The notes under the pieces are model-generated. The model was not told where the DNA came from. It was given only the letters and a program-made list of their open reading frames with translations, and did not search any database. The position numbers were made by a program, and so were the translations under genes. From positions 124,001 through 188,000 of the IMG/VR virus record IMGVR_UViG_3300037245_001419: a DNA stretch of 64,000 nt. The stretch is one strand, 5' to 3'. Below are positions 6,201 to 50,157 of the stretch, in pieces (positions within the stretch are counted from its first letter, which is position 1; the number at the start of each line of letters is the position of its first letter).

Positions 6201-6389
6201 CTCAGATGGATTCCTGGTGGGTTTACTGGCGGTGGCCCAGCACCACAGGTTGCAGGGTACAAATTTTTTAATTGGACTGCCCATAAAAATGGATCAGGTT
6301 TTCCTGAAATAAAGATTCAAGATAGAGGGCCGGATGTGAACAAAGCCGACACACCGTATTTAATATCTATGACATATGTATTAATATAA
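3237..6389 (+). CDS. Long tail fibre / receptor-binding protein with YadA-like and SIIGG repeats
   Basis: 1050 aa. N-terminal DVIITSAGLDA attachment motif, YadA-head-like repeats (ASIAMGY, DTAMGY, SVAMG), then many S(S/T)IIGGxxN repeats. Late promoter upstream. Confidence 0.75.
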   Translation: MADVIITSAGLDAVINQSLPKFSIKYFLPIYDQRIDPEIHTALSAGLATDVIPLLNAASSADTHETLIGEKLWNFENIGFTSAYDLNDSEYFVYEESGTSVNLVTGLVQTTSQSDTAPINILVDNADPLIIHPLSNMVSGTNIPEAKYNNVPGDFFYNSPVEIISSASEVSQIADRDLLWGGVVYAPANPTPDNQIATFQATVGIKNGSLKFNKGAFYIQKLLSDGTTDNTYNPVLFGEVLFNKTQYVRTDGNGSGSVDITLALDFIIDPGNELFIATDDWVKTPPVSGAQNGLFYHGDVAIGTSGFSGSWEPRAGLEITKENEPQLKLTKDYTSKSATFEVLDSGALHIETSGSAPNLSFGFGTSASGNASIAMGYETSADDFASFATGYNTAALSVHDTAMGYVTLAYGSNSFAICDRTIAEGGNSVAMGSLAVAAGLTSFCHGSNVFTSAPRSAIIGASSSIISATGSGSSILGGQNHSIDNNFSVIASGARCNIISGGQYGSIFGSWSSSISAESEYSSIISGQLNTIENNSLRSTIINGRNNTINFNCTDATIIGGQDHIIDNGVEGSSIIGGFNNLISQDAENSSILGGENNFNYGFNSSVVGGKQNLISTDALFSSVIGGQHNAIKSTNNNSQIIGGQYNTIEDGASGQNIIISGKLNTIKDYPTGGLNSNYGFISSSVYASSFGYSNSMINASYSVVYGHSNNVIGPYNTIGTDAGADSISRFSNVIGEGNSVSASNNLAIVGSYTDFKDISNSTIIGDNNWGWWQKDVAGIPPSFTYDKSHMFGDHNSVYGNTVSAPDNKSYIFGEDNFQYGSNGMLLGFGLHPGTLGFDEGSGNWTSPSKSHAASHYFDAITIGCEQINATVSPSVNYLNLYMPQGYIDQYAGNDITIRAENNVNITSDSGDIVLTPNNNVSIDGDLNVTGSITTGGGIQTVHRQFITQNTGTRDLNFAIGVPLWDDINIISFDCMLGSESDDISAADLRWIPGGFTGGGPAPQVAGYKFFNWTAHKNGSGFPEIKIQDRGPDVNKADTPYLISMTYVLI

Positions 6390-6452
6390 ATAAAAATAAA
6401 AGGTTGCTTGAAATATAGCAACCTTCTTTAAATTGAAAACAAAGGAATTGAA

Positions 6453-6884
6453 ATGATTGAATTAACACACGAAGAGTGGTTTAAAATCTATATGATTTTA
6501 GATAATCTCGAACCATCACAAAAATACCACAAAAACTTTTTATTATTTGTAGAATCATGGAAACAGATACTGCAATACACAATGAAAGTTTATGTATCAG
6601 CATCAGAATCCATCCAATACGATCCAGATTCAGATTTTTACCAGTATAAAGAAGCATTCTTATCACTAGACAATGATGAAGAAGCCATCAGCGAATTAAA
6701 TAAAAGTCACTTAGACCTTATCCAAGAAGTCAACTCATTAAATAACGAGATAACTGCAATAGTTAAATCTGTAGTATCCTTTCAAAACATATTAATACCA
6801 AGACACCTTGTACCAGAATTAGACGAAGAAATAATGCAAGTACTATCAGTATTAATAGAGGGGTACGAAGATGAAAAAAATTAA
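6453..6884 (+). CDS. Hypothetical helical protein (possible fibre assembly factor)
   Basis: ORF directly after the tail fibre under late promoter 6385; function inferred from position only. Confidence 0.5.
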   Translation: MIELTHEEWFKIYMILDNLEPSQKYHKNFLLFVESWKQILQYTMKVYVSASESIQYDPDSDFYQYKEAFLSLDNDEEAISELNKSHLDLIQEVNSLNNEITAIVKSVVSFQNILIPRHLVPELDEEIMQVLSVLIEGYEDEKN

Positions 6885-7350
6885 AATAACCAGAAGAATG
6901 TTTATGAGAATGTATATGTTATTTTTCATGACATCATTTCATAATAAAGATGGAATGTTCCAATACTATTTAACTAAAAATATTACGTTAATGGAAGATG
7001 AACATGAACGACTCGTCAAGCTAAATAACGCAGGTCTAGTATCTCCTAAAATGCAAGAGTATATCGTCAAGAAAGAAGCCATGGTGAAAGAATGGATTGA
7101 CAACGGGAACGTTATAGATGACTTGATTAAGCATAAAGAGTTTAAAGAATTACTTAATACATATAAAGATGAAATCTATAACTATGATGTTAATAATAAT
7201 AAAATAAATTCATTCTTGATTGAGGAAGATGAGTACGAATTAGTACCAATTCCATATCGTTATATCCCATCTGAAGTAGAACGAGAACTATTTGAATTTT
7301 TATATATGATCATTGAAGAAGATATTGGTCATCTTATTGGGAGAGCTTAA
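6871..7350 (+). CDS. Hypothetical protein
   Basis: ORF overlapping the previous one; shares an IP(R/Y)..P.E C-terminal pattern with 6453-6884. Confidence 0.5.
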   Translation: MKKIKITRRMFMRMYMLFFMTSFHNKDGMFQYYLTKNITLMEDEHERLVKLNNAGLVSPKMQEYIVKKEAMVKEWIDNGNVIDDLIKHKEFKELLNTYKDEIYNYDVNNNKINSFLIEEDEYELVPIPYRYIPSEVERELFEFLYMIIEEDIGHLIGRA

Positions 7351-7352: not shown

Positions 7353-8156
7353 ATGATTAACTACAATGAACTACTAGAAACTTCAAAACAAAAGTTTCAA
7401 GAGAATAACGGTAATGTATTTACTGAGTATTATAACTTCAATAAAGAAGGATCAAATGCTATCGCAATCAACAATATACATAATTTTGATTCTATCCCAA
7501 TAACAGATCATCAAAAAGAATTATGTAGTAAGATCACATTGGCAACTTCAATAATGAATCGTGAATCCCATTTGATGGAATCACTTAAGACCTGGATTAA
7601 ATTTCCATTTAAGAAGATTGTCATAGTTGATTGGTCTAGCGACAAACCGATAACTGAAAGCATCAAAGAACATTATGGTATTGATTATAAAACTTTAGAT
7701 GAACGAATAGAAATTCATCGTGTGTCAGATCAAAAATATTACGAACATGCTTTAGCTCGTAATGAGAAAATGAAACACACAGAAGGATGGGTACTCAGTA
7801 TCGACTCAGATATATTGCTATCTCCAAGATTCGGAAGATGTATCTGTCTAGGCGATAATAAAAAACTCATTTACAAAAACGATAGAAATAAAAATGACAA
7901 AGCTCTATATGGAACAACATTATTTCATAAAGACGAGTTTGATGCAGTGGGTGGTTGCAATACAAAATTCCATGGTTGGGGGTCAGAAGACACTACTCTA
8001 TTTGCAGATATGATTGACAACGGATGTAAGACTAGACTGTTAGTCGCTCATACAATGTTTCATATCCCTCACAGTGATTATGAGCGAGCAATTAATACCA
8101 AGCATGACGACATTTATGAAAGTTTAGCTAATAATAACGCCAGATTGGTAGAATAA
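7353..8156 (+). CDS. Glycosyltransferase (GT2 / GT7 C-terminal type)
   Basis: IVIVDWSS, SIDSD (DxD) and GGCNTKFHGWGSED (galactosyltransferase C-terminal motif). Confidence 0.85.
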   Translation: MINYNELLETSKQKFQENNGNVFTEYYNFNKEGSNAIAINNIHNFDSIPITDHQKELCSKITLATSIMNRESHLMESLKTWIKFPFKKIVIVDWSSDKPITESIKEHYGIDYKTLDERIEIHRVSDQKYYEHALARNEKMKHTEGWVLSIDSDILLSPRFGRCICLGDNKKLIYKNDRNKNDKALYGTTLFHKDEFDAVGGCNTKFHGWGSEDTTLFADMIDNGCKTRLLVAHTMFHIPHSDYERAINTKHDDIYESLANNNARLVE

Positions 8157-8165
8157 AAGCCCTTT

Positions 8166-8217
8166 TGTACTTTAGTCAATAAAAATTATTGACTAAAGTA
8201 CATTTTGTTTATATACT
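8166..8217 (+). promoter_or_regulatory. 17-bp-arm palindrome overlapping a sigma70 promoter for the glycosylation island
   Basis: TGTACTTTAGTCAATAA-aaa-TTATTGACTAAAGTACA at 8166-8202; TTGACT(8189)-17 nt-TATACT(8212). Confidence 0.7.
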
Positions 8218-8236
8218 GAGTTAATAACTTGAATTA

Positions 8237-8986
8237 ATGTGTCGGAGCATTATGAATATTGAAAAGATACAGGAAGATTCCCTTGAGATAATCATCCCAT
8301 TATACAATTTAGGTCATCACCTAAAGGAATGTCTCACTTCAGTTTACAATAGTGAATCATCCCTACAATTTACAGTGACAATAGTCGATGACTGCAGCAC
8401 TGACGACTCTCTTGCAGTAGCTAGAAAATTAGCAATGGAACTAATTGATCACCCAGGACACAGACTCACTTCAGTTTACTCGAACCCGAAAAACGTACAC
8501 TTGTCAGCCACTAGAAATATTGCTTTAGCTCGTACATCATCTACGCTAATCATATGTCTTGATGCAGACGACATGATTCCACCAAATTACATTGAAGACA
8601 ATTATAAAAACATTTTAGAGCATGATGTAGATATTTCTTACACCAACTCACAATGCTTTGGTACATCATCACAGTTATTAACCTGGCCTGAGTTCAGTAT
8701 AGACCTAATTCGAGAGTCCCCATTCATCAATTGTTCTGCAATGTATAAACGAAACGTATGGGACAAGGCAGGGCCGTATGATGAGACTATGAAGTTAGGT
8801 TGGGAAGACTACGACTTCTGGCTTTCAGCAGCGAAGAGAGGCTTCAAGTTTAGGAAATGCAACACTACTTATTTAGCCTACAGACAATCAGAATCATCCA
8901 TGATCAACACTACAAATGAACAAGCAAATCAATTTAAGATCCGTGAACATTTAAGAGAAAAGCACCCAGCTTTTTATAGAGGTTAA
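8237..8986 (+). CDS. Glycosyltransferase family 2
   Basis: IIIPLYN, IVDDCSTD, SATRNIAL, CLDADD, GWEDYDFWL. Likely start at ATG 8252. Confidence 0.92.
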   Translation: MCRSIMNIEKIQEDSLEIIIPLYNLGHHLKECLTSVYNSESSLQFTVTIVDDCSTDDSLAVARKLAMELIDHPGHRLTSVYSNPKNVHLSATRNIALARTSSTLIICLDADDMIPPNYIEDNYKNILEHDVDISYTNSQCFGTSSQLLTWPEFSIDLIRESPFINCSAMYKRNVWDKAGPYDETMKLGWEDYDFWLSAAKRGFKFRKCNTTYLAYRQSESSMINTTNEQANQFKIREHLREKHPAFYRG

Positions 8987-8987
8987 T

Positions 8988-9188
8988 ATGTCAGAAAATA
9001 TTTATGATATGAAATTGCACGATGAAATAAGCTTAAATAGTTTTGTCACAATTCGTCGAGTACCTGGTGGTTGGCTTTATATAGACTTTAGTTCTTGCTC
9101 ACCAAACTCTTCTGTTACATCTACATTTGTACCATCCAACTCGGAATTTACAGGATATAACCAGGACAAAAATGAAAAACATGAATAA
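8988..9188 (+). CDS. Small hypothetical protein
   Basis: 66 aa ORF (RRVPGGWLY) tightly packed in the operon. Confidence 0.55.
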   Translation: MSENIYDMKLHDEISLNSFVTIRRVPGGWLYIDFSSCSPNSSVTSTFVPSNSEFTGYNQDKNEKHE

Positions 9189-9918
9189 TATTATACAAAG
9201 CCTATGGATAGGCCCAAAACTGTCAGTGATGGAACAACTATGCATCAAATCATTCTTAGCAAACGGACACGAGTTCCACCTTTACTGCTACAATGAAATA
9301 GAGAATGTCCCAGAAGGTACAACTATATGCGACGGTAACGAGATTCTACCAGAATCAGAAGTATTTTCATATCAAGTGGGGCCTGGAAAAGGTTCGTACT
9401 CAGCATTCTCAAACTACTTTAGATATAAAATGCTAGAAATGAAAGGTGGATGGTGGGTGGATACTGACATCATTTGCCTAAAACCATTTGATCACAAAGG
9501 TGAATTCGTATTCAGCTCTGAGATTACACACGAAAACACGCAACACACCACAAGTTCAGTAATCAAAGCCCCAGCAGGAAATGACTTTAGTTACTACTGC
9601 TATAATATCTGTGCAGATCAAGATAAAAAGACTCTTGAATGGGGTACAGTTGGCCCTAAATTAGTCAAAGGAGCAGTAGAGTTCTTCGAAATGGAAGCAT
9701 ATGTTCAAGAACCCCATGTTTTTTGCCCTCTAGGATACCAACACGCCCCTTTAATTGTACAAGAAGGCATTGACATTGACTTCCCAGAAGAGACCTATGC
9801 GGTGCACCTATGGAACGAAATGTGGAGACGGCACGGCATCGACAAAGAAAAGAAATACGATGAGTCAACAATATACGAACAACTAAAGTCACGTTACGGA
9901 GTAACCAATGATAACTGA
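9169..9918 (+). CDS. Glycosyltransferase family 32-like (DxD sugar-binding)
   Basis: IIQSLWIG, AFSNYFRY, GGWWVDTD, WGTVGP, YAVHLWNEMW. Confidence 0.88.
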   Translation, partial: KMKNMNNIIQSLWIGPKLSVMEQLCIKSFLANGHEFHLYCYNEIENVPEGTTICDGNEILPESEVFSYQVGPGKGSYSAFSNYFRYKMLEMKGGWWVDTDIICLKPFDHKGEFVFSSEITHENTQHTTSSVIKAPAGNDFSYYCYNICADQDKKTLEWGTVGPKLVKGAVEFFEMEAYVQEPHVFCPLGYQHAPLIVQEGIDIDFPEETYAVHLWNEMWRRHGIDKEKKYDESTIYEQLKSRYGVTNDN

Positions 9919-10372
9919 AGTAAAAGCCCCCAATAAATATACTCATTCTAACCTGTTTTTGGCTGGATCAATTGAAAATGGTAAAGCCGAAGAATGGCAA
10001 CAAAGATTTCTTACAGACATGCGAAAGAAATTTACAGTCAACCCAGAAACAAATTTTTTAGTACTCAATCCACGTAGAGACAACTGGTCATTTTGTAGCA
10101 CTGAAATGGAGAAACAAGTATCATGGGAGCTTGATGGACTAGCATCTTCAGATTACATCGCCATGTACTTTGATCCTGATACAATTTCTCCAATTAGCCT
10201 CCTTGAATTAGGGCTATTCGCAACGGAAAAGATCTTCATATGTTGCTCACCTAGATACTATAGATATACTAACATAAAAGTATTATGTCAAAAAGCCGGA
10301 CTTCCTTTATTTGCTGAAGAAGAAGAATGGAGAGATGCAATTTTCCAAGCTATGACCGAGGAGTATTCATGA
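9908..10372 (+). CDS. Nucleoside 2-deoxyribosyltransferase-like protein
   Basis: LFLAGSI...WQ...LNPRR...QVSWELDGL...SPISLLELGL. Confidence 0.85.
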   Translation: MITEVKAPNKYTHSNLFLAGSIENGKAEEWQQRFLTDMRKKFTVNPETNFLVLNPRRDNWSFCSTEMEKQVSWELDGLASSDYIAMYFDPDTISPISLLELGLFATEKIFICCSPRYYRYTNIKVLCQKAGLPLFAEEEEWRDAIFQAMTEEYS

Positions 10373-11400
10373 ACATTTTATACCTAGTGGACAAAAAATA
10401 TTACGACACCAAGATGTCAAGAATTCGTTTCCGAACCATGGAAGCAATCGAAGAATTATGTGATGATTCGCCAGATAATAAATTTTACTGGTATGGCCCA
10501 GGTTGGAACGGATGGGACATACTGAAGACAGCATCAGAAAACATTAAAGATGCATTTGATGGTAATTCAAATCACATAAACCTTATAGTAGCATATAAAC
10601 CTTTAGATATCTACAAGGCAGATGAACTCCATAAAGAATATAAATGCTGCTTAAATTATAATGAAATGTATGATGTTGATTGGACTAAAAAAGAGATCAA
10701 ATATTTTGGTGCGACATTAGTTATCTGTCACCACTATAACGACTGGGAAAAATTTAATCATTATCCATCATTAAATGCGATAGAGTTCCATTACATTCCA
10801 CACTCAGCAGATGAGAAAGCATTTAAGCAATGGAGCTTTGACGGTGTACAGCTACCAAAAATATATGATGTCATGTTAGTGGGTGCATATAATGTATCTA
10901 ATAAATTTGGCAACATATACCCCTTACGTGACAGGCTATCAAAGCTACTTCCAAAGATAGCACCCAAATATAGATGGGGTATATTTAACCATCCATCATA
11001 TGAAAGAGAAGACGCTAATTCAAATCAGTACGCAGAGTTTTTCAGTAAAGCTTTAAATTCTACCAGGATTGCCGTATGCGACTCTTCTATATTTAAGTAT
11101 AGATTAGGCAAGTACATTGAAGTTCCTGCAAGCGGAACTGTATTAGCAGCAGATATGCCGATGACACATCCAGTAGACCAAGAAGCCCTTAAAAATGTCA
11201 TAATCGACATAAATATGGATATGTCAGATCAAGAAATTATAGATACTATAGCAGAATACTTAGAAGACGATACTAAGTATAACCTAAAGGTAAAGAATGG
11301 ATTGGAATATGCTAAAGCATTTACATGCGAATCATACGCCACTAAATTCTTAGATATAATTACGGATTTATATGAAGATACAAATACACACCCTCAATAA
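10369..11400 (+). CDS. GT-B glycosyltransferase (CgeB/YkvP-like)
   Basis: YDVMLVG...YPLRDRL...KYIEVPASGTVL. ATG 10369 follows GAGGAG. Confidence 0.75.
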   Translation: MNILYLVDKKYYDTKMSRIRFRTMEAIEELCDDSPDNKFYWYGPGWNGWDILKTASENIKDAFDGNSNHINLIVAYKPLDIYKADELHKEYKCCLNYNEMYDVDWTKKEIKYFGATLVICHHYNDWEKFNHYPSLNAIEFHYIPHSADEKAFKQWSFDGVQLPKIYDVMLVGAYNVSNKFGNIYPLRDRLSKLLPKIAPKYRWGIFNHPSYEREDANSNQYAEFFSKALNSTRIAVCDSSIFKYRLGKYIEVPASGTVLAADMPMTHPVDQEALKNVIIDINMDMSDQEIIDTIAEYLEDDTKYNLKVKNGLEYAKAFTCESYATKFLDIITDLYEDTNTHPQ

Positions 11401-11815
11401 TAATTTAGCTAAACTTAATGAAATATTAATATATGATAGCAAAGCAGATGAGTATCGACACATTAGTCGTAGCATTAAACCAGATGTTGTATGGTGCTTA
11501 TCAATAGAGGACTGGAAGTCTTTAGGTATAGACACGCTGAAGATACATAAGATAGTATTCAGTATGTATATATCAGACAAATACGAATTTAGTAGAAAAG
11601 AGTTTTTATTTAGAGACAACTTTGCAGCAGCATATCATGTTGTAGATGAAGAGACGAAAGAGCTAATTGAAAAATTGTCATTTAAACCTGTATACCTTAT
11701 TCCATATGAAGAAGATAATATAGATACATTTGATAGAACTGTAATTGAAAACTTTAAAACATCCAAAACTTTTCATAAAAAAATAATGGATATATTTAAA
11801 GAACTTAAAGAGTAA
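11372..11815 (+). CDS. Hypothetical protein in the glycosylation operon
   Basis: ORF overlaps its neighbours in the operon. Confidence 0.55.
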   Translation: MKIQIHTLNNNLAKLNEILIYDSKADEYRHISRSIKPDVVWCLSIEDWKSLGIDTLKIHKIVFSMYISDKYEFSRKEFLFRDNFAAAYHVVDEETKELIEKLSFKPVYLIPYEEDNIDTFDRTVIENFKTSKTFHKKIMDIFKELKE

Positions 11816-11816
11816 T

Positions 11817-12686
11817 ATGAGAAGGGTAGTATTTACATCGGAAAGATCTAACATGGCGACTGCAGGTTCTTTTTACCTGCGTGCAGTCCAAGTGTACATG
11901 GCATTGCAGAGACATGGCATAAAAGCTTTTATGGAGTCCCCTGAAAAATTAGCTACACAGTCAGGAAACATTATATTCTTTATAAAACCTATTGAAAATA
12001 GCATGGAAAAGATTGAAACACTATGCGAGAATAACACAGTAATTTTAGATCCTTTAGATTTCATACCAATATTTAAAGACCTACCTCCTGGATTAGTACA
12101 TGGTTGCTTATTCAACAATAATAAAGCTAGAAATAAGTTTATTCATTTGTTTAAAAATAAAGAAATGTGTCCAGTTATCTATCATCACATAGACTTACGA
12201 TTTCGGAGCGCAACGAATCCACCAGACGAACTAAAGTTTTTATACTTAGGCACTAACTCTGAAAGAAAAGTATATGCTTACAATGAGTTCGACGATATTG
12301 ATTACAAATCAATTAATGGCAATCCTTCAGATTTTAACCAGTACACAGATCTTATAGGAAAGTACAACTGTCACTATATTGTTAACGGTTTAAAAGACGC
12401 TAAACGAAGATCATACGAGCCTTTCACAAAGTTAGCAATGGCATCTATTAATCACAGTCCCGTAATAACATATAAGAAAGATCACATTGAAATATTAGGA
12501 GAATACTATCCTTATTATATAACTAGTAAAGATATAGGTTCTGTAAAAAATATGATAAACTACATAAAAAAGACTTATAAAACTAAAGTATGGAATGATG
12601 CAGTCTCTATAATGAAAGATGCTAAAGAGAAGTTTTTACTTGGTAATACAATTCATACATATATAGATATTATAAAAAAACATTAA
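11817..12686 (+). CDS. Putative GT-B glycosyltransferase
   Basis: GSFYLRA...KP...ILDPLD...YHHID...KLAMA pattern; operon context. Confidence 0.5.
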   Translation: MRRVVFTSERSNMATAGSFYLRAVQVYMALQRHGIKAFMESPEKLATQSGNIIFFIKPIENSMEKIETLCENNTVILDPLDFIPIFKDLPPGLVHGCLFNNNKARNKFIHLFKNKEMCPVIYHHIDLRFRSATNPPDELKFLYLGTNSERKVYAYNEFDDIDYKSINGNPSDFNQYTDLIGKYNCHYIVNGLKDAKRRSYEPFTKLAMASINHSPVITYKKDHIEILGEYYPYYITSKDIGSVKNMINYIKKTYKTKVWNDAVSIMKDAKEKFLLGNTIHTYIDIIKKH

Positions 12687-12718
12687 GGATAAATTGAAAT
12701 GAAAGTTTATATAGTGTC

Positions 12719-13631
12719 CGACATTGTTGACGGGCCGATGGGCGGTCGCAATCAACTAGTAAAATTTTTAATACACCTACTCAAACAAAAAAATGTATAC
12801 ACCGATAATGTGAAAGATGCAGACATAATCTTATTTGATTCTTGGCATAGATACAACGATGTCATAGAGCTTAAAAAAATATATGAAGACAAGATATTTG
12901 TGCATCGATTAGATGGCCCTATAAAACTATATAATAATATGGATGATAACAGGGACGATATAATATACGCTATGAATGGAAGAATTGCTTCAGCTACTAT
13001 ATTCCAATCTGAATACTCAAAACATAATAATGAGGAGATGGGACTATTAATAGACAAGCCATTCATAGTCGCCAACAATGTTGCAGACAGTAGATACTTC
13101 TATAGAAATAAAGATATTACAGAAGAAAAAGATTCATCTGGTAGAATAGAAATAATATCTACTTCATTTTCAAGTAACTACAAGAAAGGTTTTGACGTAT
13201 ATGAATACCTCGATAACAACCTGGACTTCGACACCTACAATTATACATTCATTGGAAACAGCCCTGTCAAATTTAAAAATATAATACACAAACCGCCAAT
13301 GAATAGCTTAGATCTGGGCAATGAGCTTCGAAACAGCGACTTATATATTTCGGCATCATTGAACGACCCCTGTTCCAACTCTTTAATAGAAGCTAAAGCA
13401 TGCGGTCTCCCAGTAATTGCACGAAACTCAGGTGGTCATCCTGAGATCGTCGGCAAAGGTAGTTTATTATTTAACGATACTGATAATATACTAGAAATTA
13501 TCAACGAAACATACGATAACTTAGTCACACTAATGTATGAAATAACCTCAAGAACTCCTAAAGATTTCATCGAACAATATATACAGTTTTTCACAGACCT
13601 ATTAAATCAGTCAAGGAACAACAATGATTAA
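12719..13631 (+). CDS. Glycosyltransferase family 4
   Basis: GPMGG, IFQSEY, DLYISASLNDPCSNSLIEAKACGLPVI, SGGHPEIV (EX7E-type motif). Confidence 0.9.
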
Positions 13632-14211
13632 TAAACCACTTATGGCTAACGACGATTTTATTAAAAAAGAAGCTAAGAAACATTCTTCTGAGAAGAAAAG
13701 AATAGTAACAATGTCTAAGAATGTTATTAGAAATGAACATGCAGAAATAATCAAAAAAATTAACGTAAAAAGAATGTTATGTATTGGTTGTAGACATGAT
13801 TCAGAAATAGTTTCATTTAACAAGAATGGATTCAGTGCGTCAGGTATCGACGTTGCAATAGAGACAGACCTTATCAAGCGTATGAACGCTCACGATATAA
13901 AAGAAACTTTTTCTGAAAATGAATTTGATGTTGTGTACTCTTCACATTCATTGGAACATATGTATGATCCTAAATTAGTGTTAGAAGGTATCAAGAAAAT
14001 AAGTAAACATGGCGTGTTTATTGTTCTCCCAATACAAATAAATGGTCAGCCATCTCATTCGCACCCCACAATGTTTGATGTGATGTTAAACCCACCACAA
14101 AGACTAAAAAAAGACAATCCTGTTTTAGACGACTTTAGTTGTCTTGGAGAATTTAAGGTGTCGTATTATAAAAAATCTTATGATGAAATAATTATGTATT
14201 TAACTTGGTAA
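13624..14211 (+). CDS. Class I SAM-dependent methyltransferase
   Basis: MLCIGCR...GID...FDVVYSSHSLEH. Confidence 0.85.
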   Translation: MINKPLMANDDFIKKEAKKHSSEKKRIVTMSKNVIRNEHAEIIKKINVKRMLCIGCRHDSEIVSFNKNGFSASGIDVAIETDLIKRMNAHDIKETFSENEFDVVYSSHSLEHMYDPKLVLEGIKKISKHGVFIVLPIQINGQPSHSHPTMFDVMLNPPQRLKKDNPVLDDFSCLGEFKVSYYKKSYDEIIMYLTW

Positions 14212-14217
14212 TAATTT

Positions 14218-14943
14218 ATGAAAATAGGTTGTATAATCAGATCCGTTGGTGAACGGACAGAAAATTTATGTATAGACTCTGTTGAACAATACATCAGTGA
14301 TGTTAATATAATAAAAAATGTTAGTCCATTTCACAAGGCTGTAGATCAAATGTTTGAGTATGCAGCTAAACAAGATTGGGACTGGTACATTGGTCTCGAT
14401 GCAGACGTAATACTTGCACCAGGTTGGTACGACACTTTAGTTAACTACCTCACTCATTTAGAAGGGAATGTTTTTAGAATAGACTTTCAGATTAAAGATA
14501 AGTTTGTTGACCCATTATTATGGGGGGTGCATGTTTATAATAATACCCACACTTCCTTATTAAGAGATGTATTGAAAAAAACTACACATCTAAATAAACC
14601 TGAGAGTGCCATTGTACACCAATTAAGAACCCACGCAAAGGCAATCAACGCCACTGGGATACTATTAGGATACCATGGATACCACCAATACAAGAAAGAC
14701 ATATTTAATAGATTTGCATTAAGAGCAACCCGTAACCCTGAGTGGTTAGAAAAATATAAATTGTTTAAACACTACGATGAAGATACAGCCATTGGAAAAC
14801 AAGGATGGAAGTATGGTCGAAAAAATATAAAAAAGATTGACTTCATGGACTACAATAATAAGAAAGACTTTGAGAACGAGTATCCACCTCTTAAAATAAC
14901 ACTTGAAGAATTCTATAAAGAAATAAAGGAGAGCAATGTTTAA
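14218..14943 (+). CDS. Putative GT-A glycosyltransferase
   Basis: IIRSVGERTE...WYIGLDADV (DxD). Confidence 0.6.
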   Translation: MKIGCIIRSVGERTENLCIDSVEQYISDVNIIKNVSPFHKAVDQMFEYAAKQDWDWYIGLDADVILAPGWYDTLVNYLTHLEGNVFRIDFQIKDKFVDPLLWGVHVYNNTHTSLLRDVLKKTTHLNKPESAIVHQLRTHAKAINATGILLGYHGYHQYKKDIFNRFALRATRNPEWLEKYKLFKHYDEDTAIGKQGWKYGRKNIKKIDFMDYNNKKDFENEYPPLKITLEEFYKEIKESNV

Positions 14944-15520
14944 GTCTACTCTTGATAAAATAAAACACAAAGATACTTACGGCCCAACAACTTCTCGAAA
15001 ATTTAAAGAAGATATGATAGAAATTCTTATGGATAAACCCTGGAATGGAGACATACTAGAAGTAGGAATATTTACAGGTGAGACCACTCTCATTTTAGCA
15101 AAAATTGCAGAGAAGTTAAATAAAAAAGTATACGCATTTGAACAAAACAGTTCGTACATTAACCAAACACAGAGACTTCTAAAAGCTCATAATATAACTA
15201 ATGTAGAAATACAATTGAAAGATGTATATACGCAAGAATGGACAGTTGAAAATATAGGCTGTACGTTTATTGATTGTGTTCATACGCAAATGCATATTAG
15301 ACAAGACATACATAATACAAAATCAGTCATGTCAGGCAAAGGCTTTGTTTTTGTCCATGATTATGGGTTGATTGATGAACATGGTCAAAGTATAAAGCCA
15401 TATATAGATATATGTGAAATAACAAAGATCGTTAGGTTTATGGGTGAAGAATCCGATTGGGATAAAGTCCCGTATGGTAAAATTGTTGACTGGGAAGCAG
15501 CCCAATTGGAATTTATATAA
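14936..15520 (+). CDS. SAM-dependent methyltransferase (Methyltransf_24-like)
   Basis: ILEVGIFTGET...FIDCVH...VFVHDY. Confidence 0.82.
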   Translation: MFKSTLDKIKHKDTYGPTTSRKFKEDMIEILMDKPWNGDILEVGIFTGETTLILAKIAEKLNKKVYAFEQNSSYINQTQRLLKAHNITNVEIQLKDVYTQEWTVENIGCTFIDCVHTQMHIRQDIHNTKSVMSGKGFVFVHDYGLIDEHGQSIKPYIDICEITKIVRFMGEESDWDKVPYGKIVDWEAAQLEFI

Positions 15521-15532
15521 CAAGGAGTATAT

Positions 15533-16441
15533 ATGAAAATATTAGTAACAGGTGGCTTAGGCTTTATAGGGTCAAACTTAGTAGATAAACTATGTGAAGA
15601 TCTTAACAATGATGTATATGTAATGGATAATTTGTCACGGGGTGACGAGATTAGAGCAAACATCAAAGCAACTACATATTCAGTAGATATTCGGGACGAA
15701 CCAGATGTAAATTTCTTTTTCCCCAATGGTCTAGACGTAATAGTCCATTTAGCAGCCTTAGCACGCATACAGCCGTCTTTCGAAGAACCCGTAGAGACAT
15801 GTTCTGTTAATATAGAAGGCACGCAGAAGGTACTCGAAATGGCCCGTAAACTGAAGTGTAAGGTTGTATACGCAGGTTCTAGTTCTGCACTTGGCGATCC
15901 TCATATTAATCCTTATTCATCATCCAAATATATGGGTGAACAAATGGTTGAAGCATACTATAAATGTTTCGATGTTCCAGGAGTTATAACCCGTTTCTAT
16001 AATGTATACGGAAATCGTAACGTCCAGGATGAAAAAATGGGTAATCTATTAGGAATATTACAAAAACAATACCTAGAAGACAAGCCCCTTACTTTAGTTG
16101 AAGATTGTAAGTCAAAAAAGAGAGATTTTACTTCAGTTAATGATATATGTGCCGGATTGATGCTCGCTGCAAGTCTAGATGGAGAGAAAATGAAAGCTCA
16201 GATATATAATTTGGGTAGAGGGTCGAACTTATCGGTCTATGAGGTTGGTATGTTCTTCAAAAAGTACTCTAAAAAGGATATAGTGATCGAATATTTACCT
16301 AAGAGAAAGGGAGAACAGGCAACGTCTTTAGCTGACCTGAAGAAATCACACTCTGAGTTGGGGTTCTACCCCGAAGAAAATATGGAAGATTATATACAAA
16401 ATTGGATTGAAATGAAGGAGATTGATGATGTCAATTTATAA
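15533..16441 (+). CDS. NAD-dependent NDP-sugar epimerase/dehydratase
   Basis: ILVTGGLGFIGS, HLAA, YSSSK (YxxxK), RFYNVYG, RDFT. Confidence 0.93.
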   Translation: MKILVTGGLGFIGSNLVDKLCEDLNNDVYVMDNLSRGDEIRANIKATTYSVDIRDEPDVNFFFPNGLDVIVHLAALARIQPSFEEPVETCSVNIEGTQKVLEMARKLKCKVVYAGSSSALGDPHINPYSSSKYMGEQMVEAYYKCFDVPGVITRFYNVYGNRNVQDEKMGNLLGILQKQYLEDKPLTLVEDCKSKKRDFTSVNDICAGLMLAASLDGEKMKAQIYNLGRGSNLSVYEVGMFFKKYSKKDIVIEYLPKRKGEQATSLADLKKSHSELGFYPEENMEDYIQNWIEMKEIDDVNL

Positions 16442-17210
16442 AAGATTAGATTTTAGCGGTTTGAATGGTTATGGAATAGCAGGTATGGGTTTTGTAGGCT
16501 CAGCTGTATTCAATACCTTTAATAATAAAGATTTTATTGTAGTATACGACAAATATAAAAAACATTTAGACAATAAACTGCCCATATTGAAAAAATGTAC
16601 ATACATATTTGCATGTCTACCCACCCCTATGGGTAAAAATGGCAAACAAGATTTCTCTGCATATCATACATTCTTTAAAGAGATTGAAGGGTATGAAGGT
16701 ATAGTTATTGTAAAAAGTACAGTATTATACTCAAATATAAAACCATACCTTGATAATTTCAACATAGTTATGAATCCAGAGTTTCTTAATCAGAATTCCG
16801 CATACTCTGACATGGAAAATGAGAAGGTAGTTATACTTGGTGGTGAAATTGACCTGGTAACTAAAGTAAAAAAACTTTATCAGAATAGCATGGGCAAAAA
16901 AGATGTATCATTTGAGATGTGCTCTATTGAAGAATCTATTAATATTAAGTATTTACATAACAACTACCACGCATATAAGGTATTGTTCTGGAATATGGTA
17001 TATGAAGTCACTGGAAATCACCGCAAAATCTTTGATGTGTACTCTAAACTCACTGGTAATACTCATGAGATGGCTAACGTAGCCTCAGATGGTAAGCTAG
17101 GATACGGTGGTGCATGCTTCCCGAAAGACGTAAACGCATTTTTTCATGAACATAACCACGAACTTAGCGAATTCATGAACAAATATAACGACCGTTTAAG
17201 AGGCGAATAA
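16422..17210 (+). CDS. UDP-glucose/GDP-mannose dehydrogenase family, lacking the C-terminal domain
   Basis: GMGFVG, CLPTP, KSTV, NPEFL, GYGGACFPKD (catalytic Cys); ends about 25 aa later. Confidence 0.88.
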   Translation: MMMSIYKRLDFSGLNGYGIAGMGFVGSAVFNTFNNKDFIVVYDKYKKHLDNKLPILKKCTYIFACLPTPMGKNGKQDFSAYHTFFKEIEGYEGIVIVKSTVLYSNIKPYLDNFNIVMNPEFLNQNSAYSDMENEKVVILGGEIDLVTKVKKLYQNSMGKKDVSFEMCSIEESINIKYLHNNYHAYKVLFWNMVYEVTGNHRKIFDVYSKLTGNTHEMANVASDGKLGYGGACFPKDVNAFFHEHNHELSEFMNKYNDRLRGE

Positions 17211-17262
17211 CTAAAGTAAACCCATAATATAAATACTTCAAACCATTTTGGAGTGTTTGTAT

Positions 17263-17787
17263 ATGGGTTTCCCTAACGCTTTTAGTTCCGACAAGTTTCA
17301 ATTAAGATTTAGCAACATACCTACTGTCGGTGACAAGAAGGTAGACACTAGACTATTTGATTTATATGTCAAATCAATCATTGTATCAGATATTAACGAA
17401 GAGTTAGTTAACTCTGACATCTTTAATTTTCAGATAAGACATCCTATATCTAGAGCGAATGAAAATCTCAATCAGCTCATCATAGAATTTGTGTTAGATG
17501 AAGATTTCGAGAACTACTTCACGTTCTTTAATTTCATGCAACAAGAGAGATACCTGTACACTGAGAACACACCATCACAACCAAACGATGTTTTTAGACT
17601 TAATAATATAAAAACAATCGCCCTGGAACTACTGGATAATCAAGGCAGAGTTAAAAAAAGCCTGGACTTTACAGAAGCATATATTACATCCCTTAATTCA
17701 CTCAATTTAATTATGGGACTGTCAGAACAAGTAACATTTAATGCGTCATTTCAATACGAGCAGATATTGTTTAGAGAGAACGATTAA
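17263..17787 (+). CDS. T4 gp3-like tail terminator / tube-fold protein
   Basis: FQLRFSNIP...IEFVLDEDFENYF...LELLDN...FTEAYITSL; late promoter at 17228. Confidence 0.7.
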   Translation: MGFPNAFSSDKFQLRFSNIPTVGDKKVDTRLFDLYVKSIIVSDINEELVNSDIFNFQIRHPISRANENLNQLIIEFVLDEDFENYFTFFNFMQQERYLYTENTPSQPNDVFRLNNIKTIALELLDNQGRVKKSLDFTEAYITSLNSLNLIMGLSEQVTFNASFQYEQILFREND

Positions 17788-17816: not shown

Positions 17817-18227
17817 TTGATTGAAGAGGACTATATGGAAACTATAGATAATTTGATAGAGTTTGAACCTTTGACTGATCTTAAGATCATCAAAGAAACT
17901 CTAGGCAGAATGGGTATCGCCAACAAGAAAGATAAAATATTATACCCGACAGCGTACATTTATGGAAACTTCGATAAGATGTACCTGGCACATTTCAAAC
18001 AACTGTTCCTTCTATCCCGTAAAGATGCGTATCCAAATGTATCAAGCGAAGACATAGAGAGACTAAACAGTATAGCTTTCTGCTTAGAAAGTTGGGGCCT
18101 TATTAAAATAATAAACGAAAGCATCGAACCCCACAACAAATTTATATTCGTTCTCCCATTTGAAGAAAAAGTAAACTGGGAAATATCACATAAATTCAAC
18201 ATTAAATCACTAAAATTTGCGAGGTAG
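17817..18227 (+). CDS. regA: T4-like translational repressor RegA
   Basis: IKETLGRMGIANKKDKILY...HFKQL...RLNSIAFCLESWGLIKI closely follows T4 RegA. Confidence 0.93.
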   Translation: MIEEDYMETIDNLIEFEPLTDLKIIKETLGRMGIANKKDKILYPTAYIYGNFDKMYLAHFKQLFLLSRKDAYPNVSSEDIERLNSIAFCLESWGLIKIINESIEPHNKFIFVLPFEEKVNWEISHKFNIKSLKFAR

Positions 18228-25681: not shown

Positions 25682-25882
25682 ATGATTATTTGTGTTGAGT
25701 GTCACACAGAGATGAAAGTTGAGAAAAATGGTGTTGTTGTCCGCTATGGTGGAAACCACTGTTACTCAGGAGACAGTTGGAAATGCCCTACATGCGGTAA
25801 AATGGTAATCAATTGCAATAACAGCCCGTACCCTTCAGATGAACCTTTAGATCCGAAACACGATATCGAAATGAATCAATGA
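25682..25882 (+). CDS. Zinc-ribbon protein
   Basis: CVEC...CPTC. Confidence 0.7.
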   Translation: MIICVECHTEMKVEKNGVVVRYGGNHCYSGDSWKCPTCGKMVINCNNSPYPSDEPLDPKHDIEMNQ

Positions 25883-41999: not shown

Positions 42000-42386
42000 C
42001 TATTTAGCCTTCCTTAATTCGTCACACTTTTCCCAACAAACACTTTCAGTCACATCTTTAATAACTTCAAATGCTTCATTCAATTTATCTAATGCGTCAT
42101 AGTATTTTTCATTAAACTTATCCATAGGGGCGTTTACTTTAGTTGATAGAATCGCTTCTGCTCTTCTGTCAGCAGTGGTATCCATTTGATTCCATAATTC
42201 GTCGAAAAAGAATTTAGGATTAACATCAATACCATCAATCTGCATGGTAATATCATATGACTTGTTGGATTTATTTTTGTCTAACCATTCACCGTTAAGT
42301 TCTTTAAGCATACCAACAGCTTGTAAAAAGAAGTGACCCATAAGCTCTTTATTGTTGTGCAATAGTTCTTCTCTATCAAATTTCAT
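42000..42386 (-). CDS. Hypothetical protein
   Basis: TAATG-coupled to the cca gene. Confidence 0.6.
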   Translation of the reverse strand: MKFDREELLHNNKELMGHFFLQAVGMLKELNGEWLDKNKSNKSYDITMQIDGIDVNPKFFFDELWNQMDTTADRRAEAILSTKVNAPMDKFNEKYYDALDKLNEAFEVIKDVTESVCWEKCDELRKAK

Positions 42387-49026: not shown

Positions 49027-49081
49027 ACAGGCTCCTTATCTATTATATAATATAGTTAATTAACTAAACATTGTCAACAAA

Positions 49082-49528
49082 TTATTTATATACATTATGC
49101 CAGTTATCTCTATCACCTCTATTATCATCTAACATCCTGTCTATAATAATTTTGTGACCTATACTAGTAATATTTGCAATGATATATCCCATATTATAAT
49201 CATTAAACATGCCTTCATTAATAAGCAGGTCATAGTTTACACACATCCAATACATACTTTCAACCGTGATTGTGAATGAATCACTATAGTTCTTACAATT
49301 GTGTGTAATATTGACATATTCACGCCAGAAATTTTGGATAAATACGTTATTATCAAGGTACACTATGTTAAATATAGTAATTAAATCATAACCTTCAGCA
49401 GTCCCATTAATTATATCCTTAAAATCAATATAATCAAGTTTTTCACCCCAGTTAAAGGTGTCACAGCTTCTTATATAAGCTATAGTAACAGCTAAACTAC
49501 AGCTTAATTTTTCATCCATAAGGTTCAT
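49082..49528 (-). CDS. Early hypothetical protein
   Basis: Own dyad promoter and SD. Confidence 0.6.
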   Translation of the reverse strand: MNLMDEKLSCSLAVTIAYIRSCDTFNWGEKLDYIDFKDIINGTAEGYDLITIFNIVYLDNNVFIQNFWREYVNITHNCKNYSDSFTITVESMYWMCVNYDLLINEGMFNDYNMGYIIANITSIGHKIIIDRMLDDNRGDRDNWHNVYK

Positions 49529-50098: not shown

Positions 50099-50157
50099 TT
50101 TAATTACTCCACTTGTTATCTATTATTAAAGATAGTTAATTAGCTAATCACTGTCAA

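What the first reader, a model, noticed from the sequence alone, without database searches (positions are those of the whole stretch)
7353..17210. 10-kb glycan-biosynthesis island between tail-fibre and tail-terminator genes
Seen: about 7 GT-like genes (GT2, GT7C-like, GT32-like, GT4, CgeB-like), two methyltransferases, an NDP-sugar epimerase, a short UDP-glucose dehydrogenase and a nucleoside deoxyribosyltransferase-like gene in one coupled operon. One GT is under a late promoter (6385); the rest follow a sigma70 promoter (8189). Established: virion glycosylation is known in chloroviruses and some mycobacteriophages, and glycosylated DNA in T-even phages. Inference: the phage builds a complex methylated uronic-acid-containing glycan, on the virion (structural neighbourhood), on the host surface (receptor masking) or on DNA.
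Basis: partly seen in the sequence, partly recalled or inferred. Interest (0 to 1): 0.65.

Follow-up and report, generated by a model that had tools for sequence, protein, structure and literature searches.

The report
Phage glycan-assembly operon beside tail fibre
An uncultured marine T4-like phage carries, at the end of its tail-gene block, a tightly packed 10-kb operon of seven or eight sugar-transferases, two methyltransferases and two sugar-nucleotide enzymes that should build a methylated oligosaccharide inside the infected cell; islands of this kind are already known in marine T4-like phages, but what they decorate has never been shown.

Summary
Window 7353-17210 is a co-directional gene string with no gap over 12 nt after 8237. 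It encodes 7 supported glycosyltransferases (4 GT-A, 3 GT-B) plus one doubtful 147-aa ORF, two SAM methyltransferases, a GalE/UDP-GlcA-epimerase-like SDR, a conserved short UDP-glucose-dehydrogenase-like enzyme and a 4mcj-type nucleoside-deoxyribosyltransferase-like protein.

The first GT and two unknown small genes follow a T4-type late promoter motif. The rest follows a strong hairpin and the only well-placed sigma70-type promoter on the late strand of the 212-kb genome.

All products are soluble. The genome has no priming transferase, flippase, polymerase or other glycan genes, and no ThyA-like hydroxymethylase, so DNA glycosylation is unlikely.

A related contig keeps the island under purifying selection. 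The fibre-to-GT7C part is 92% identical, while 8237-12686 is a deeply diverged cassette. A near-identical strain has an HNH homing endonuclease inside the island.

GT-rich hypervariable islands next to tail fibres are already described in pelagi- and cyanomyophages, so this is a new member of a known kind. The acceptor is unresolved: a virion protein, probably the fibre (about 0.4), or a host envelope glycan (about 0.3).

The parts
3237..6389 (+). 1050-aa fibrous protein, the putative tail fibre and a candidate acceptor. It is preceded by the late-promoter motif at 3192.
   Evidence: Weak YadA/Hep_Hag head similarity at residues 279-574. No match in cultured phages. Upstream genes are tail sheath, baseplate hub and tail-spike-like. 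The C-terminus is 91% identical in L005.
6385..6392 (+). T4-type late promoter motif TATAAATA, overlapping the fibre stop codon. It is followed by a 9-bp hairpin at 6400-6425.
   Evidence: Seven of the 8 + strand copies in the window lie within 70 nt upstream of a + strand gene start.
6453..6884 (+). 143-aa protein of unknown function, first gene of the late unit.
   Evidence: No Pfam, PHROG or NCBIfam hit. 92% aa identity and dN/dS 0.30 against L005.
6871..7350 (+). 159-aa protein of unknown function. It overlaps the previous gene by 14 nt.
   Evidence: No family hit. 88% aa identity and dN/dS 0.14 against L005.
7353..8156 (+). GT-A glycosyltransferase with a GT7C/chondroitin-synthase-like C-terminal motif, in the late unit.
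   Evidence: PF02709 4.8e-9. GWGxED-type alignment. dN/dS 0.10.
8166..8202 (+). Perfect 17-bp hairpin followed by a T-run, terminator-like. Its 3' arm carries the -35 box of the next promoter.
   Evidence: Free energy -21.5 kcal/mol, z -7.7. Conserved in L005, where identity breaks at 8209.
8189..8217 (+). Sigma70-type (early-type) promoter: TTGACT, 17-nt spacer, TATACT. It lies 20 nt before the GT2 start.
   Evidence: Of 48 such motifs in the genome, 46 lie on the - strand before early genes, and this is the only well-placed one on the + strand. L005 has TTGACT-17-TATAAT at the same place.
8237..8986 (+). GT2-family GT-A glycosyltransferase with no membrane segment.
   Evidence: PF00535 1.4e-22. 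TuaG/EpsE-like in NCBIfam, below cut-offs.
8988..9188 (+). 66-aa ORF with a Ser/Thr-rich C-terminal half, function unknown.
   Evidence: A 66-aa counterpart at 43% identity in L005.
9172..9918 (+). GT32-like GT-A glycosyltransferase (DxD). It forms a conserved pair with the next GT-B in phages and bacteria.
   Evidence: PF04488 5e-6. SetA-like DxD alignment. The pair is conserved in L006, L009-L011 and L019.
9908..10372 (+). Nucleoside 2-deoxyribosyltransferase-like protein (PF15891, 4mcj family). Its role in the pathway is unknown.
   Evidence: It is inserted between the GT32-like/CgeB-like pair only in this lineage.
10369..11400 (+). CgeB-like GT-B glycosyltransferase.
   Evidence: 28 homologues. 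Several carry PF13524 and some are fused to methyltransferase domains.
11372..11815 (+). 147-aa ORF, doubtful: it may be the remnant of a GT-B N-terminal domain.
   Evidence: PF13477 at 0.0025 only. Absent from L005. Present in the near-identical L008.
11817..12686 (+). Compact GT-B glycosyltransferase of a family that Pfam does not name.
   Evidence: 311 relatives in the representative library. AF2 pLDDT 93.6. Foldseek top hits are Gtf3/GtfC, which glycosylate serine-rich-repeat adhesins, and SenB: E 1e-8, TM 0.64-0.69. Atlas lead.
12699..13631 (+). GT4/GT1-type GT-B glycosyltransferase.
   Evidence: PF00534 1.5e-10. phrog_2170.
13624..14211 (+). Class I SAM methyltransferase (Methyltransf_23/11).
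   Evidence: Homologous GT-MT fusions exist.
14218..14943 (+). GT-A-fold protein, a probable glycosyltransferase.
   Evidence: PF00535 at 0.0036. The Atlas model has TM 0.57-0.66 to GT2 clusters.
14936..15520 (+). SAM methyltransferase (Methyltransf_24).
   Evidence: PF13578 2.8e-10. The same family sits in the bacterial homologous cluster L006.
15533..16441 (+). Extended-SDR NDP-sugar epimerase/dehydratase.
   Evidence: PF01370 4.9e-42. Best solved relatives are 4zrm (UDP-hexose 4-epimerase), 6zl6 (labelled only 'Epimerase domain-containing protein' by the tool; a UDP-GlcA 4-epimerase from my own knowledge of the entry) and UXS.
16425..17210 (+). Short (261 aa) UDP-glucose-dehydrogenase-like enzyme. 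It has the NAD-binding and central domains and intact catalytic residues, but no UDP-binding C-terminal domain.
   Evidence: No PF03720 anywhere in the genome.
17228..17235 (+). Late promoter motif that ends the island and starts the next late gene.
17248..17787 (+). 179-aa late protein, possibly a T4 gp3-like tube terminator (weak evidence). It is followed by RegA at 17817-18227.
   Evidence: phrog_45 7.7e-10. T4 gp3 at E 0.53, same length. RegA PF01818 4.9e-21.

Best explanation
Shown: the island is a self-contained, purely cytoplasmic glycan-assembly line of a deep-branching marine T4-like phage.

Inferred pathway:
- Host UDP-sugars are converted by the short UGDH-like dehydrogenase and the adjacent SDR epimerase, probably to a uronic acid or its 4-epimer or pentose derivative.
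- Seven soluble glycosyltransferases (four GT-A, three GT-B) add sugars one after another.
- Two SAM methyltransferases O-methylate the product.

Inferred timing:
- Most of the pathway (8237-17210) is switched on early from a host-sigma70-type promoter, so donors and enzymes are ready in advance.
- The first GT (7353-8156) is made late, in one transcript with two small unknown proteins directly behind the fibre gene.

Inferred acceptor, and the least certain step: a phage structural protein, most likely the 1050-aa fibre or another late virion protein. The virion would then leave the cell carrying a phage-specified methylated oligosaccharide. The type of that glycan can be exchanged between strains as a cassette.
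For: - Domain inventory.
- Tight packing, with overlaps or gaps of 12 nt or less from 8237 to 17210.
- Purifying selection: dN/dS 0.10-0.35 against L005.
- No hydrophobic segment in any island protein.
- The only proteins with more than three predicted membrane segments in the whole genome are an ion channel and a Na/Ca exchanger, plus one 131-aa reading frame overlapping a gene on the other strand that I take to be spurious.
- No Bac_transf priming enzyme.
- All GT1/GT2 hits in the genome lie in the island, and there is no NTP_transferase. Nothing for lipid priming, flipping, polymerisation or export is phage-encoded.
- The island lies at the distal end of the late block: terminase, sheath, baseplate hub, tail-spike-like, fibre-like.
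- The first GT shares a late promoter with the genes after the fibre. It stays linked to the fibre C-terminus at 92% identity in L005 while the rest diverges.
- The best fold matches of the 289-aa GT-B are enzymes that extend O-glycans on proteins, Gtf3/GtfC. This is fold level only.
- Precedents: mycobacteriophage virions carry glycans made by phage GTs (Freeman et al. 2023, as cited in PMC12619734). From my own knowledge, chlorovirus and mimivirus GT/methyltransferase clusters glycosylate capsid or fibrils, and chlorovirus GT genes are expressed early.
Against: - No acceptor is identified. The major capsid protein shows no obvious C-terminal extension relative to cyanophage homologues (one search covers residues 9-433 of 439).
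- Early-type expression of most of the island would also suit host takeover.
- The closest bacterial homologous cluster (L006) contains a 491-aa protein with five or more membrane segments and looks like a surface-polysaccharide locus.
- In the more distant viral contigs L009-L011 the related island sits next to PhoH, not next to fibres.
- Soluble or peripheral GTs are also the norm in O-antigen assembly on host lipid carriers.
- Promoters are motif matches only.
Confidence: 0.4

Rival explanations
1. Host-envelope remodelling. The soluble phage GTs and methyltransferases work at the inner face of the membrane on the host's own undecaprenyl-linked O-antigen, capsule or LPS-core intermediates. 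The host's flippase or ABC exporter then carries the altered glycan to the surface. There it masks the receptor against superinfecting or competing phages, or stops progeny from sticking to debris. This is the reading given in the literature for such islands.
For: - An early-type sigma70 promoter drives 8237-17210.
- Homologous gene sets occur in bacterial clusters that include a multi-pass membrane protein (L006).
- NCBIfam's nearest names are teichuronic-acid, EPS and colanic-acid GTs.
- Tail fibres and GTs co-localise in a hypervariable 'host recognition cluster' in pelagimyophages, which the authors interpret as O-chain modification (PMC7029224). The same view is taken for cyanophages (PMC12801897).
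- Cassette-like divergence fits an arms race at the cell surface.
Against: - No phage-encoded priming transferase, flippase, polymerase, ligase or Gtr-type membrane protein.
- Seven GTs plus two methyltransferases make a whole new glycan rather than a side-branch, and host exporters would have to accept it.
- The first GT is under a late promoter, co-transcribed with genes behind the fibre. That is too late to protect the cell.
Confidence: 0.3
2. Another cytoplasmic acceptor. The glycan would be built on a host protein, a small molecule or lipid, or as a free methylated oligosaccharide or polysaccharide. Possible uses are host takeover, a decoy, or storage.
For: - All enzymes are soluble.
- Fold relatives of the 289-aa GT include small-molecule enzymes (SenB, BshA, MshA) and a methylmannose-polysaccharide transferase.
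- The NDT-like protein has no obvious place in a protein- or LPS-glycan pathway.
- Expression is early-type.
Against: No precedent that I know of in phages for a pathway of this size. The linkage to the fibre module would be coincidental.
Confidence: 0.17
3. DNA hypermodification. The GTs would glycosylate modified bases in phage DNA, as in T-even phages, with the NDT-like protein acting on nucleotides.
For: - Early-type promoter.
- A nucleoside-deoxyribosyltransferase-like gene sits inside the operon.
- Phage GTs that put diverse glycans on DNA are known (Pyle et al. 2024, cited in PMC12619734).
Against: - No thymidylate-synthase-family hydroxymethylase anywhere in the 93%-complete genome. 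The same search finds the family in 10 of 14 control genomes.
- The GT families here are polysaccharide or protein types. The T4 alpha/beta-GT families were not searched directly here, and none appeared in the Pfam scans of the island proteins.
- Seven GTs, sugar methylation and a uronic-acid branch go well beyond the DNA glycans I know of.
Confidence: 0.04
4. Decaying passenger DNA. The island would be a recent acquisition from a bacterium with no function in the phage.
For: The short UGDH and the 147-aa ORF could look like fragments. An HNH endonuclease polymorphism shows the region is in flux.
Against: - All ORFs are intact in three independent contigs, with dN/dS 0.10-0.35 even at saturated dS.
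- GC content is like the rest of the genome.
- The short UGDH is a conserved family with invariant catalytic residues.
- The promoter is conserved.
Confidence: 0.03

Closest known systems
Hypervariable 'host recognition cluster' and LPS-like gene islands of marine T4-like myophages: pelagimyophages (PMC7029224) and cyanomyophages P-SSM2, S-SCSM1 and S-SCSM2R, the last with up to 13 GTs (PMC12801897)
   Same: - T4-like genome: gp23 MCP and RegA.
- The island lies inside the structural block next to fibre genes.
- Many GTs together with an NDP-sugar epimerase and UDP-glucose dehydrogenase.
- Strong variability between close relatives.
- Function unproven in all cases.
   Different: - MCP is only about 37% identical to any cultured phage, and no island GT except the generic epimerase has a cultured-phage homologue.
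- The gene set differs: CgeB-like, GT32-like, Gtf3-like and GT7C-like, not the GT8 family reported as most represented in pelagimyophages.
- The dual late/early promoter layout has not, to my knowledge, been described.
- Position relative to VrlC and gp14 was not tested.
Virion glycosylation in mycobacteriophages (Freeman et al. 2023, cited in PMC12619734) and, from my own knowledge, in chloroviruses and mimiviruses
   Same: - Virus-encoded soluble GTs, with methyltransferases and NDP-sugar enzymes in the giant viruses.
- No viral export machinery is needed.
- GT-methyltransferase fusions exist among homologues of the CgeB-like GT here, which recalls multi-domain chlorovirus enzymes.
   Different: - No glycan has been detected here and no acceptor motif identified.
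- There is no sequence relationship to those viral GTs.
- Mycobacteriophage systems have 2-4 genes, not about 15.
Bacterial O-antigen, EPS, teichuronic-acid and spore-crust (CgeB) glycan clusters, for example the metagenomic bacterial locus L006
   Same: - The same GT32-like + CgeB-like gene pair at 42-46% identity.
- The same two methyltransferase families, plus GT2 and GT1 genes.
- UGDH next to an epimerase, as in uronic-acid polymers.
   Different: The phage island has no membrane protein, priming transferase or exporter. It also has the short UGDH form.
Phage serotype-conversion systems (GtrABC) and T-even DNA glucosylation
   Same: They are phage-encoded glycosyltransferases. The GT2 has a weak PHROG match to the GtrB-like family at 1.8e-6.
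   Different: No GtrA/GtrC, and no membrane anchor on the GT2. No hydroxymethylase for DNA.

Membership tests
GT-rich hypervariable island of marine T4-like myophages (HRC / 'LPS genes') | T4-like core genome | tested here: met
   Gp23 PF07068 3.8e-85; RegA; terminase, sheath and baseplate hub; T4-type late promoter motifs before late genes.
GT-rich hypervariable island of marine T4-like myophages (HRC / 'LPS genes') | Cluster of several GTs with NDP-sugar enzymes, inside the structural region beside tail-fibre genes | tested here: met
   The fibre assignment itself is weak.
GT-rich hypervariable island of marine T4-like myophages (HRC / 'LPS genes') | Non-syntenic or hypervariable between related genomes | tested here: met
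   L005 is 92% identical up to 8209, then about 69% with one gene missing, then identical again. There is an HNH insertion in L008.
GT-rich hypervariable island of marine T4-like myophages (HRC / 'LPS genes') | Located between VrlC and neck gene gp14, as in pelagimyophages | not tested
   VrlC and gp14 were not searched for. Downstream neighbours here are a gp3-like protein and RegA.
Virion glycosylation system | Glycan covalently attached to capsid, tail or fibre proteins | not testable with these tools
   Needs virions or co-expression plus mass spectrometry.
Virion glycosylation system | GT genes expressed with, or linked to, structural genes | tested here: inconclusive
   The first GT is behind a late promoter motif and linked to the fibre. 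The other genes are behind an early-type promoter motif. These are motifs only; no transcripts were available.
Virion glycosylation system | Recognisable acceptor extension on a structural protein | tested here: inconclusive
   The MCP aligns to cyanophage MCPs over residues 9-433 of 439, so there is no long C-terminal extension. Fibre and tube were not analysed for acceptor sites.
Wzx/Wzy- or ABC-dependent surface polysaccharide pathway; GtrABC serotype conversion | Priming polyprenyl-phosphate transferase | tested here: not met
   PF02397 is absent. There is no WecA-like multi-pass protein.
Wzx/Wzy- or ABC-dependent surface polysaccharide pathway; GtrABC serotype conversion | Flippase, polymerase, exporter or GtrA/GtrC membrane proteins | tested here: not met
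   A hydropathy scan of all ORFs found only a Na/Ca exchanger and an ion channel as real proteins with more than three predicted membrane segments; a 131-aa frame overlapping a gene on the other strand was taken to be spurious. The island proteins all score 1.45 or less.
DNA glycosylation (T-even type) | dCMP/dUMP hydroxymethylase of the ThyA family to create the acceptor base | tested here: not met
   PF00303 is absent from the genome, which is 93% complete. The control search finds it in 10 of 14 genomes.
UDP-glucose/GDP-mannose dehydrogenase family | N-terminal NAD-binding domain with GxGxxG | tested here: met
   PF03721. G20, G22 and G25 are invariant.
UDP-glucose/GDP-mannose dehydrogenase family | Central domain with catalytic Cys and the Lys/Asn/Asp set | tested here: met
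   PF00984. The GYGG-C-PKD motif aligns to 7kws. K175, N179, C231 and D235 are invariant in 42 sequences.
UDP-glucose/GDP-mannose dehydrogenase family | C-terminal UDP-binding domain (PF03720) | tested here: not met
   The protein ends about 30 residues after the catalytic Cys. The model covers only about half to two thirds of UGDH (TM 0.77 by query, about 0.5 by target). PF03720 is absent from the whole genome.

The most novel reading that the evidence does not exclude
This would be the first virion-glycosylation system of a T4-like phage of marine bacteria. A late-made GT primes the tail fibre or another virion protein. An early-made set of six GTs, two methyltransferases and a new short type of sugar dehydrogenase extends it into a methylated, acidic oligosaccharide. 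The central GT cassette is swapped between strains, so closely related phages carry different glycan 'serotypes' on their host-recognition apparatus.
Probability: 0.3. Interest if true: 0.75.

Novelty: new member of a known kind. Interest (0 to 1): 0.45.

Why it matters
GT-rich islands are among the most common unexplained features of abundant marine myophages. For twenty years they have been labelled 'LPS genes' by annotation alone.

This island is a compact, complete example that could be tested:
- It has no membrane steps.
- It has a clear split between a late and an early transcription unit.
- A candidate acceptor gene lies directly upstream.

If it decorates the fibre or virion, glycosylation would have to be counted among the host-range and stability determinants of ocean phages. 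If it remodels the host envelope, it would be a lytic-phage form of serotype conversion.

The short UGDH-like family is widespread in metagenomes, also occurs in Campylobacter phages, and lacks the UDP-binding domain. It is an enzymological question in its own right.

Tried and rejected
Searches that found nothing:
- Megablast of the island and of 20 kb of the window against cultured phages gave no match.
- Protein searches of cultured phages with the gp3-like protein, the fibre and the CgeB-like GT gave no match.
- PDB sequence searches with the 343-aa and 289-aa proteins, and a profile of the latter, gave nothing significant. The 289-aa protein's fold was then settled by a model and Foldseek.

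Ideas rejected:
- The short UGDH as a truncated pseudogene. More than 120 clusters of the same length share invariant catalytic residues, and no separate C-terminal domain gene exists.
- ORFs 11372-11815 and 11817-12686 as one split GT-B. They are in different frames, L005 lacks the first, and the second folds as a complete GT-B on its own.

Attempts that failed:
- The wider context of the bacterial locus L006: the record is not held.
- One call failed on a coordinate slip of mine and was corrected.

Other results:
- A genome-contig scan with the CgeB-like profile gave only four loci in unrelated phyla and no clue to the host.

Full report
WHAT THE WINDOW IS

The window is bases 124001-188000 of a 211,777-bp IMG/VR virus record judged 93% complete.
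- It is a T4-like myophage. It has a gp23-type major capsid protein (PF07068 3.8e-85) and RegA at 17817-18227.
- The 20 kb before the window hold terminase, tail sheath, baseplate hub and a tail-spike-like protein.
- It is far from anything cultured. There is no megablast match, and the MCP is at most 37% identical to cyanomyophage MCPs.
- GC content is 30-38% throughout, and the island does not stand out.

CHECK OF THE OBSERVATION

Seven glycosyltransferases are supported:
- 7353-8156: GT-A with the Glyco_transf_7C motif.
- 8237-8986: GT2.
- 9172-9918: GT32-like with DxD.
- 10369-11400: homologues carry the CgeB-like PF13524, and some are fused to methyltransferases.
- 11817-12686: discussed below.
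- 12699-13631: GT4/GT1.
- 14218-14943: GT-A fold.

The 289-aa protein at 11817-12686 had no family or PDB sequence match. The word search found only one relative. I therefore used the full representative search, which found 311 relatives. I aligned 46 of them and folded the protein, giving pLDDT 93.6. Foldseek places it among compact GT-B enzymes. The best hits are Gtf3/GtfC, which extend O-glycans on serine-rich-repeat adhesins, and the selenosugar synthase SenB (E about 1e-8, TM 0.64-0.69). This shows the fold, not the acceptor.

The 147-aa ORF 11372-11815 has only a weak GT4-N match and is missing from a relative, so I count it as doubtful.

The other enzymes are:
- Two SAM methyltransferases (13624-14211 and 14936-15520).
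- An extended SDR (15533-16441). Its best solved relatives are a UDP-hexose 4-epimerase (4zrm), entry 6zl6 (a UDP-glucuronate 4-epimerase from my own knowledge; the tool labels it only 'Epimerase domain-containing protein') and UDP-glucuronate decarboxylases.
- The short UGDH-like protein (16425-17210).
- The PF15891/4mcj-type NDT-like protein (9908-10372).

From 8237 to 17210 neighbouring genes overlap or lie at most 12 nt apart. 'One coupled operon' is therefore fair for that part.

THE SHORT UGDH IS A CONSERVED FORM

- It matches only positions 74-278 of the 413-position NDP-sugar dehydrogenase model.
- It ends about 30 residues after the catalytic cysteine motif.
- More than 120 protein clusters at 40-66% identity have the same length of 245-285 aa. 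In 42 of them the GxGxxG motif and the Lys/Asn/Cys/Asp catalytic set are invariant.
- The model (pLDDT 92) overlays UGDH structures with TM 0.77 by query length but only about 0.5 by target length, so it has the NAD and central domains only.
- No separate UDP-binding domain is encoded anywhere in the genome.
- The same short form is annotated as UGDH in Campylobacter phages CP21 and CP220. It sits next to an epimerase in the distant viral contigs L009-L011.
- How it binds its substrate is open. The 'uronic acid' inference is therefore plausible but not shown.

TRANSCRIPTION LAYOUT (MOTIFS ONLY)

- TATAAATA is not enriched overall (10 found, 14 expected). However, 7 of the 8 + strand copies lie just upstream of + strand gene starts: 3192, 6385, 17228, 17801, 18368, 19854 and 27898. 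None lies between 6393 and 17227.
- The copy at 6385 precedes 6453-6884, 6871-7350 (both unknown) and the first GT.
- Next comes a perfect 17-bp hairpin with a T-run at 8166-8202 (-21.5 kcal/mol, z -7.7).
- Overlapping its 3' arm is a sigma70-type promoter at 8189-8217.
- A genome-wide scan for that promoter form found 48 sites. Forty-six are on the - strand, mostly 20-40 nt before small early-type genes. Only two are on the + strand, and the one at 8189 is the only one placed before a gene.
- The related contig L005 has an even better match at the same place.
- So the bulk of the island looks like an early unit embedded in the late strand, and the first GT belongs to a late unit tied to the fibre gene.

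WHAT IS ABSENT

- No island protein has a membrane-like segment.
- In the whole genome the only proteins with more than three predicted membrane segments are a Na/Ca exchanger and an ion channel, plus one 131-aa reading frame overlapping a gene on the other strand that I take to be spurious.
- There is no Bac_transf priming enzyme and no NTP_transferase.
- There is no GT1 or GT2 outside the island.
- There is no ThyA-family hydroxymethylase.
- The phage therefore draws on host NDP-sugars and encodes nothing to prime, flip, polymerise or export a glycan. It also lacks the enzyme that makes the acceptor base for the known DNA glycosylations.

RELATIVES AND EVOLUTION

- A 6,984-bp JGI contig (L005) is syntenic.
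- From the fibre C-terminus through the first GT and the hairpin it is 92% identical in DNA (dS 0.1-0.4).
- From 8210 to about 12700 it falls to about 69% in DNA and 43-80% in protein, with saturated dS, and it lacks the 147-aa ORF.
- At the start of the GT4 gene it is identical again.
- dN/dS is 0.10-0.35 wherever it can be computed, so the genes are under purifying selection.
- The central block has a much older divergence than its flanks, which means it was exchanged as a cassette, with one breakpoint at the hairpin.
- A near-identical contig (L007/L008) carries a 186-aa HNH-type homing endonuclease inserted between the NDT-like and CgeB-like genes. Seventy-one mismatches cluster in window 10000-10499.
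- More distant viral contigs (L009-L011, 42-190 kb) share the GT32-like + CgeB-like pair and the epimerase + short-UGDH pair. L011 adds a sulfotransferase, APS kinase, LicD, an FkbM methyltransferase and a B12-radical-SAM enzyme, and its island lies next to PhoH.
- A bacterial 382-kb contig (L006, GC 33.6%) has the same GT pair and the same two methyltransferase families. It also has further GTs, Glf and a 491-aa protein with five or more membrane segments, so it is probably a surface-polysaccharide locus.
- Genome-collection homologues are scattered over Planctomycetota, Acidobacteria and a low-GC contig binned as Nisaea. They give no clue to the host.

WHAT IS KNOWN

- Zaragoza-Solas et al. 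(PMC7029224) describe a large hypervariable 'host recognition cluster' in pelagimyophages and cyanomyophages. It lies inside the structural region and mixes tail fibres with many GTs and enzymes such as UDP-glucose 6-dehydrogenase. They suggest modification of the host O-chain.
- Cultured cyanomyophages with up to 13 GTs plus epimerases are reported, and are likewise interpreted as host-surface modification (PMC12801897).
- Virion glycosylation by phage GTs has been demonstrated in mycobacteriophages (Freeman et al. 2023, as cited in PMC12619734). I could not read that paper itself.
- The finding is therefore a new member of a known kind whose function has never been demonstrated.

MECHANISM AND RIVALS

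Shown: a complete set of soluble enzymes for converting NDP-sugars, for about seven glycosyl transfers and for methylation. They are conserved and selected, split into a late and an early-type unit, and lie at the fibre end of the tail block.

Inferred: the product is a methylated hetero-oligosaccharide, possibly acidic.

The acceptor is the open step.
- I put a phage structural protein first (about 0.4). Nothing needed for a lipid-linked surface pathway is encoded. The first GT is transcriptionally and evolutionarily tied to the fibre gene. Every demonstrated case of a large virus-encoded GT set without export genes that I know of decorates the virion.
- Host-envelope remodelling through host carriers and exporters is a serious rival (about 0.3). 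It is favoured by the early-type promoter, the bacterial homologous cluster and the literature view.
- Another cytoplasmic acceptor gets about 0.17, DNA about 0.04 and non-function about 0.03.

LIMITS

- Promoters are consensus matches, and no expression data could be obtained.
- The fibre and gp3 labels are weak.
- The roles of the NDT-like protein, the 66-aa ORF and the two late small proteins are unknown.
- GT donor and acceptor specificities cannot be read from sequence.

Noticed in passing
L008:9463-10023 (would fall between window 10372 and 10369): A near-identical strain carries a 186-aa HNH-type homing endonuclease ORF inserted exactly between the NDT-like and CgeB-like genes. Seventy-one of about 95 mismatches between the two strains cluster in window 10000-10499, like a co-conversion tract.
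   Followed up: partly
window 49077-62552, - strand, continuing beyond the window to genome 193685: About 20 almost identical early-type promoters: TTGACA, a conserved spacer, then a TATATT -10 box. Each lies about 30 nt before a small ORF. This is a stereotyped early-gene array.
   Followed up: partly
outside the window: G000:C1:13947-15002 (-) and G000:C1:833-1525 (+): The phage encodes a Na+/Ca2+ exchanger family protein with about 8 predicted membrane segments (PF01699 3e-42) and an Ion_trans-type channel (PF00520 4e-27). Both are unusual auxiliary genes.
   Followed up: no
window 16425-17210 and proteins P0180-P0299: The two-domain UGDH-like family (245-285 aa, no UDP-binding domain) is abundant in metagenomes. 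It also occurs in Campylobacter phages CP21, CP220 and CPt10. In CP21, the one context examined, it sits among hypothetical proteins without annotated GTs. Its substrate is unknown.
   Followed up: partly
L011:5919-19237: A 190-kb viral contig has a larger related island with two GT1 genes, a B12-radical-SAM enzyme, LicD, a sulfotransferase, an FkbM methyltransferase and APS kinase. This implies a sulfated and methylated glycan. The island lies next to PhoH.
   Followed up: no
L019 (contig binned as uncultured Nisaea sp., GC 27.8%): This contig carries two GT32-like copies, the CgeB-like GT, a relative of the 289-aa GT-B and an epimerase. Its GC content is far too low for the named genus, so it may be a misbinned phage or low-GC bacterial contig.
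   Followed up: no
window 8988-9188: A conserved 66-aa ORF inside the operon has a Ser/Thr-rich C-terminal half and no family match. It could be a small carrier or acceptor, or just a spacer gene.
   Followed up: no
window 42386-43753 (-) and 25879-26901 (+): The window also encodes a tRNA nucleotidyltransferase (phrog_2244 4e-76) and an ATP-dependent DNA ligase (phrog_114 2e-20).
   Followed up: no
window 6400-6425: A 9-bp hairpin lies immediately downstream of the late promoter motif at 6385 and the fibre stop codon. It could end fibre transcripts or form the 5' end of the next late transcript.
   Followed up: no
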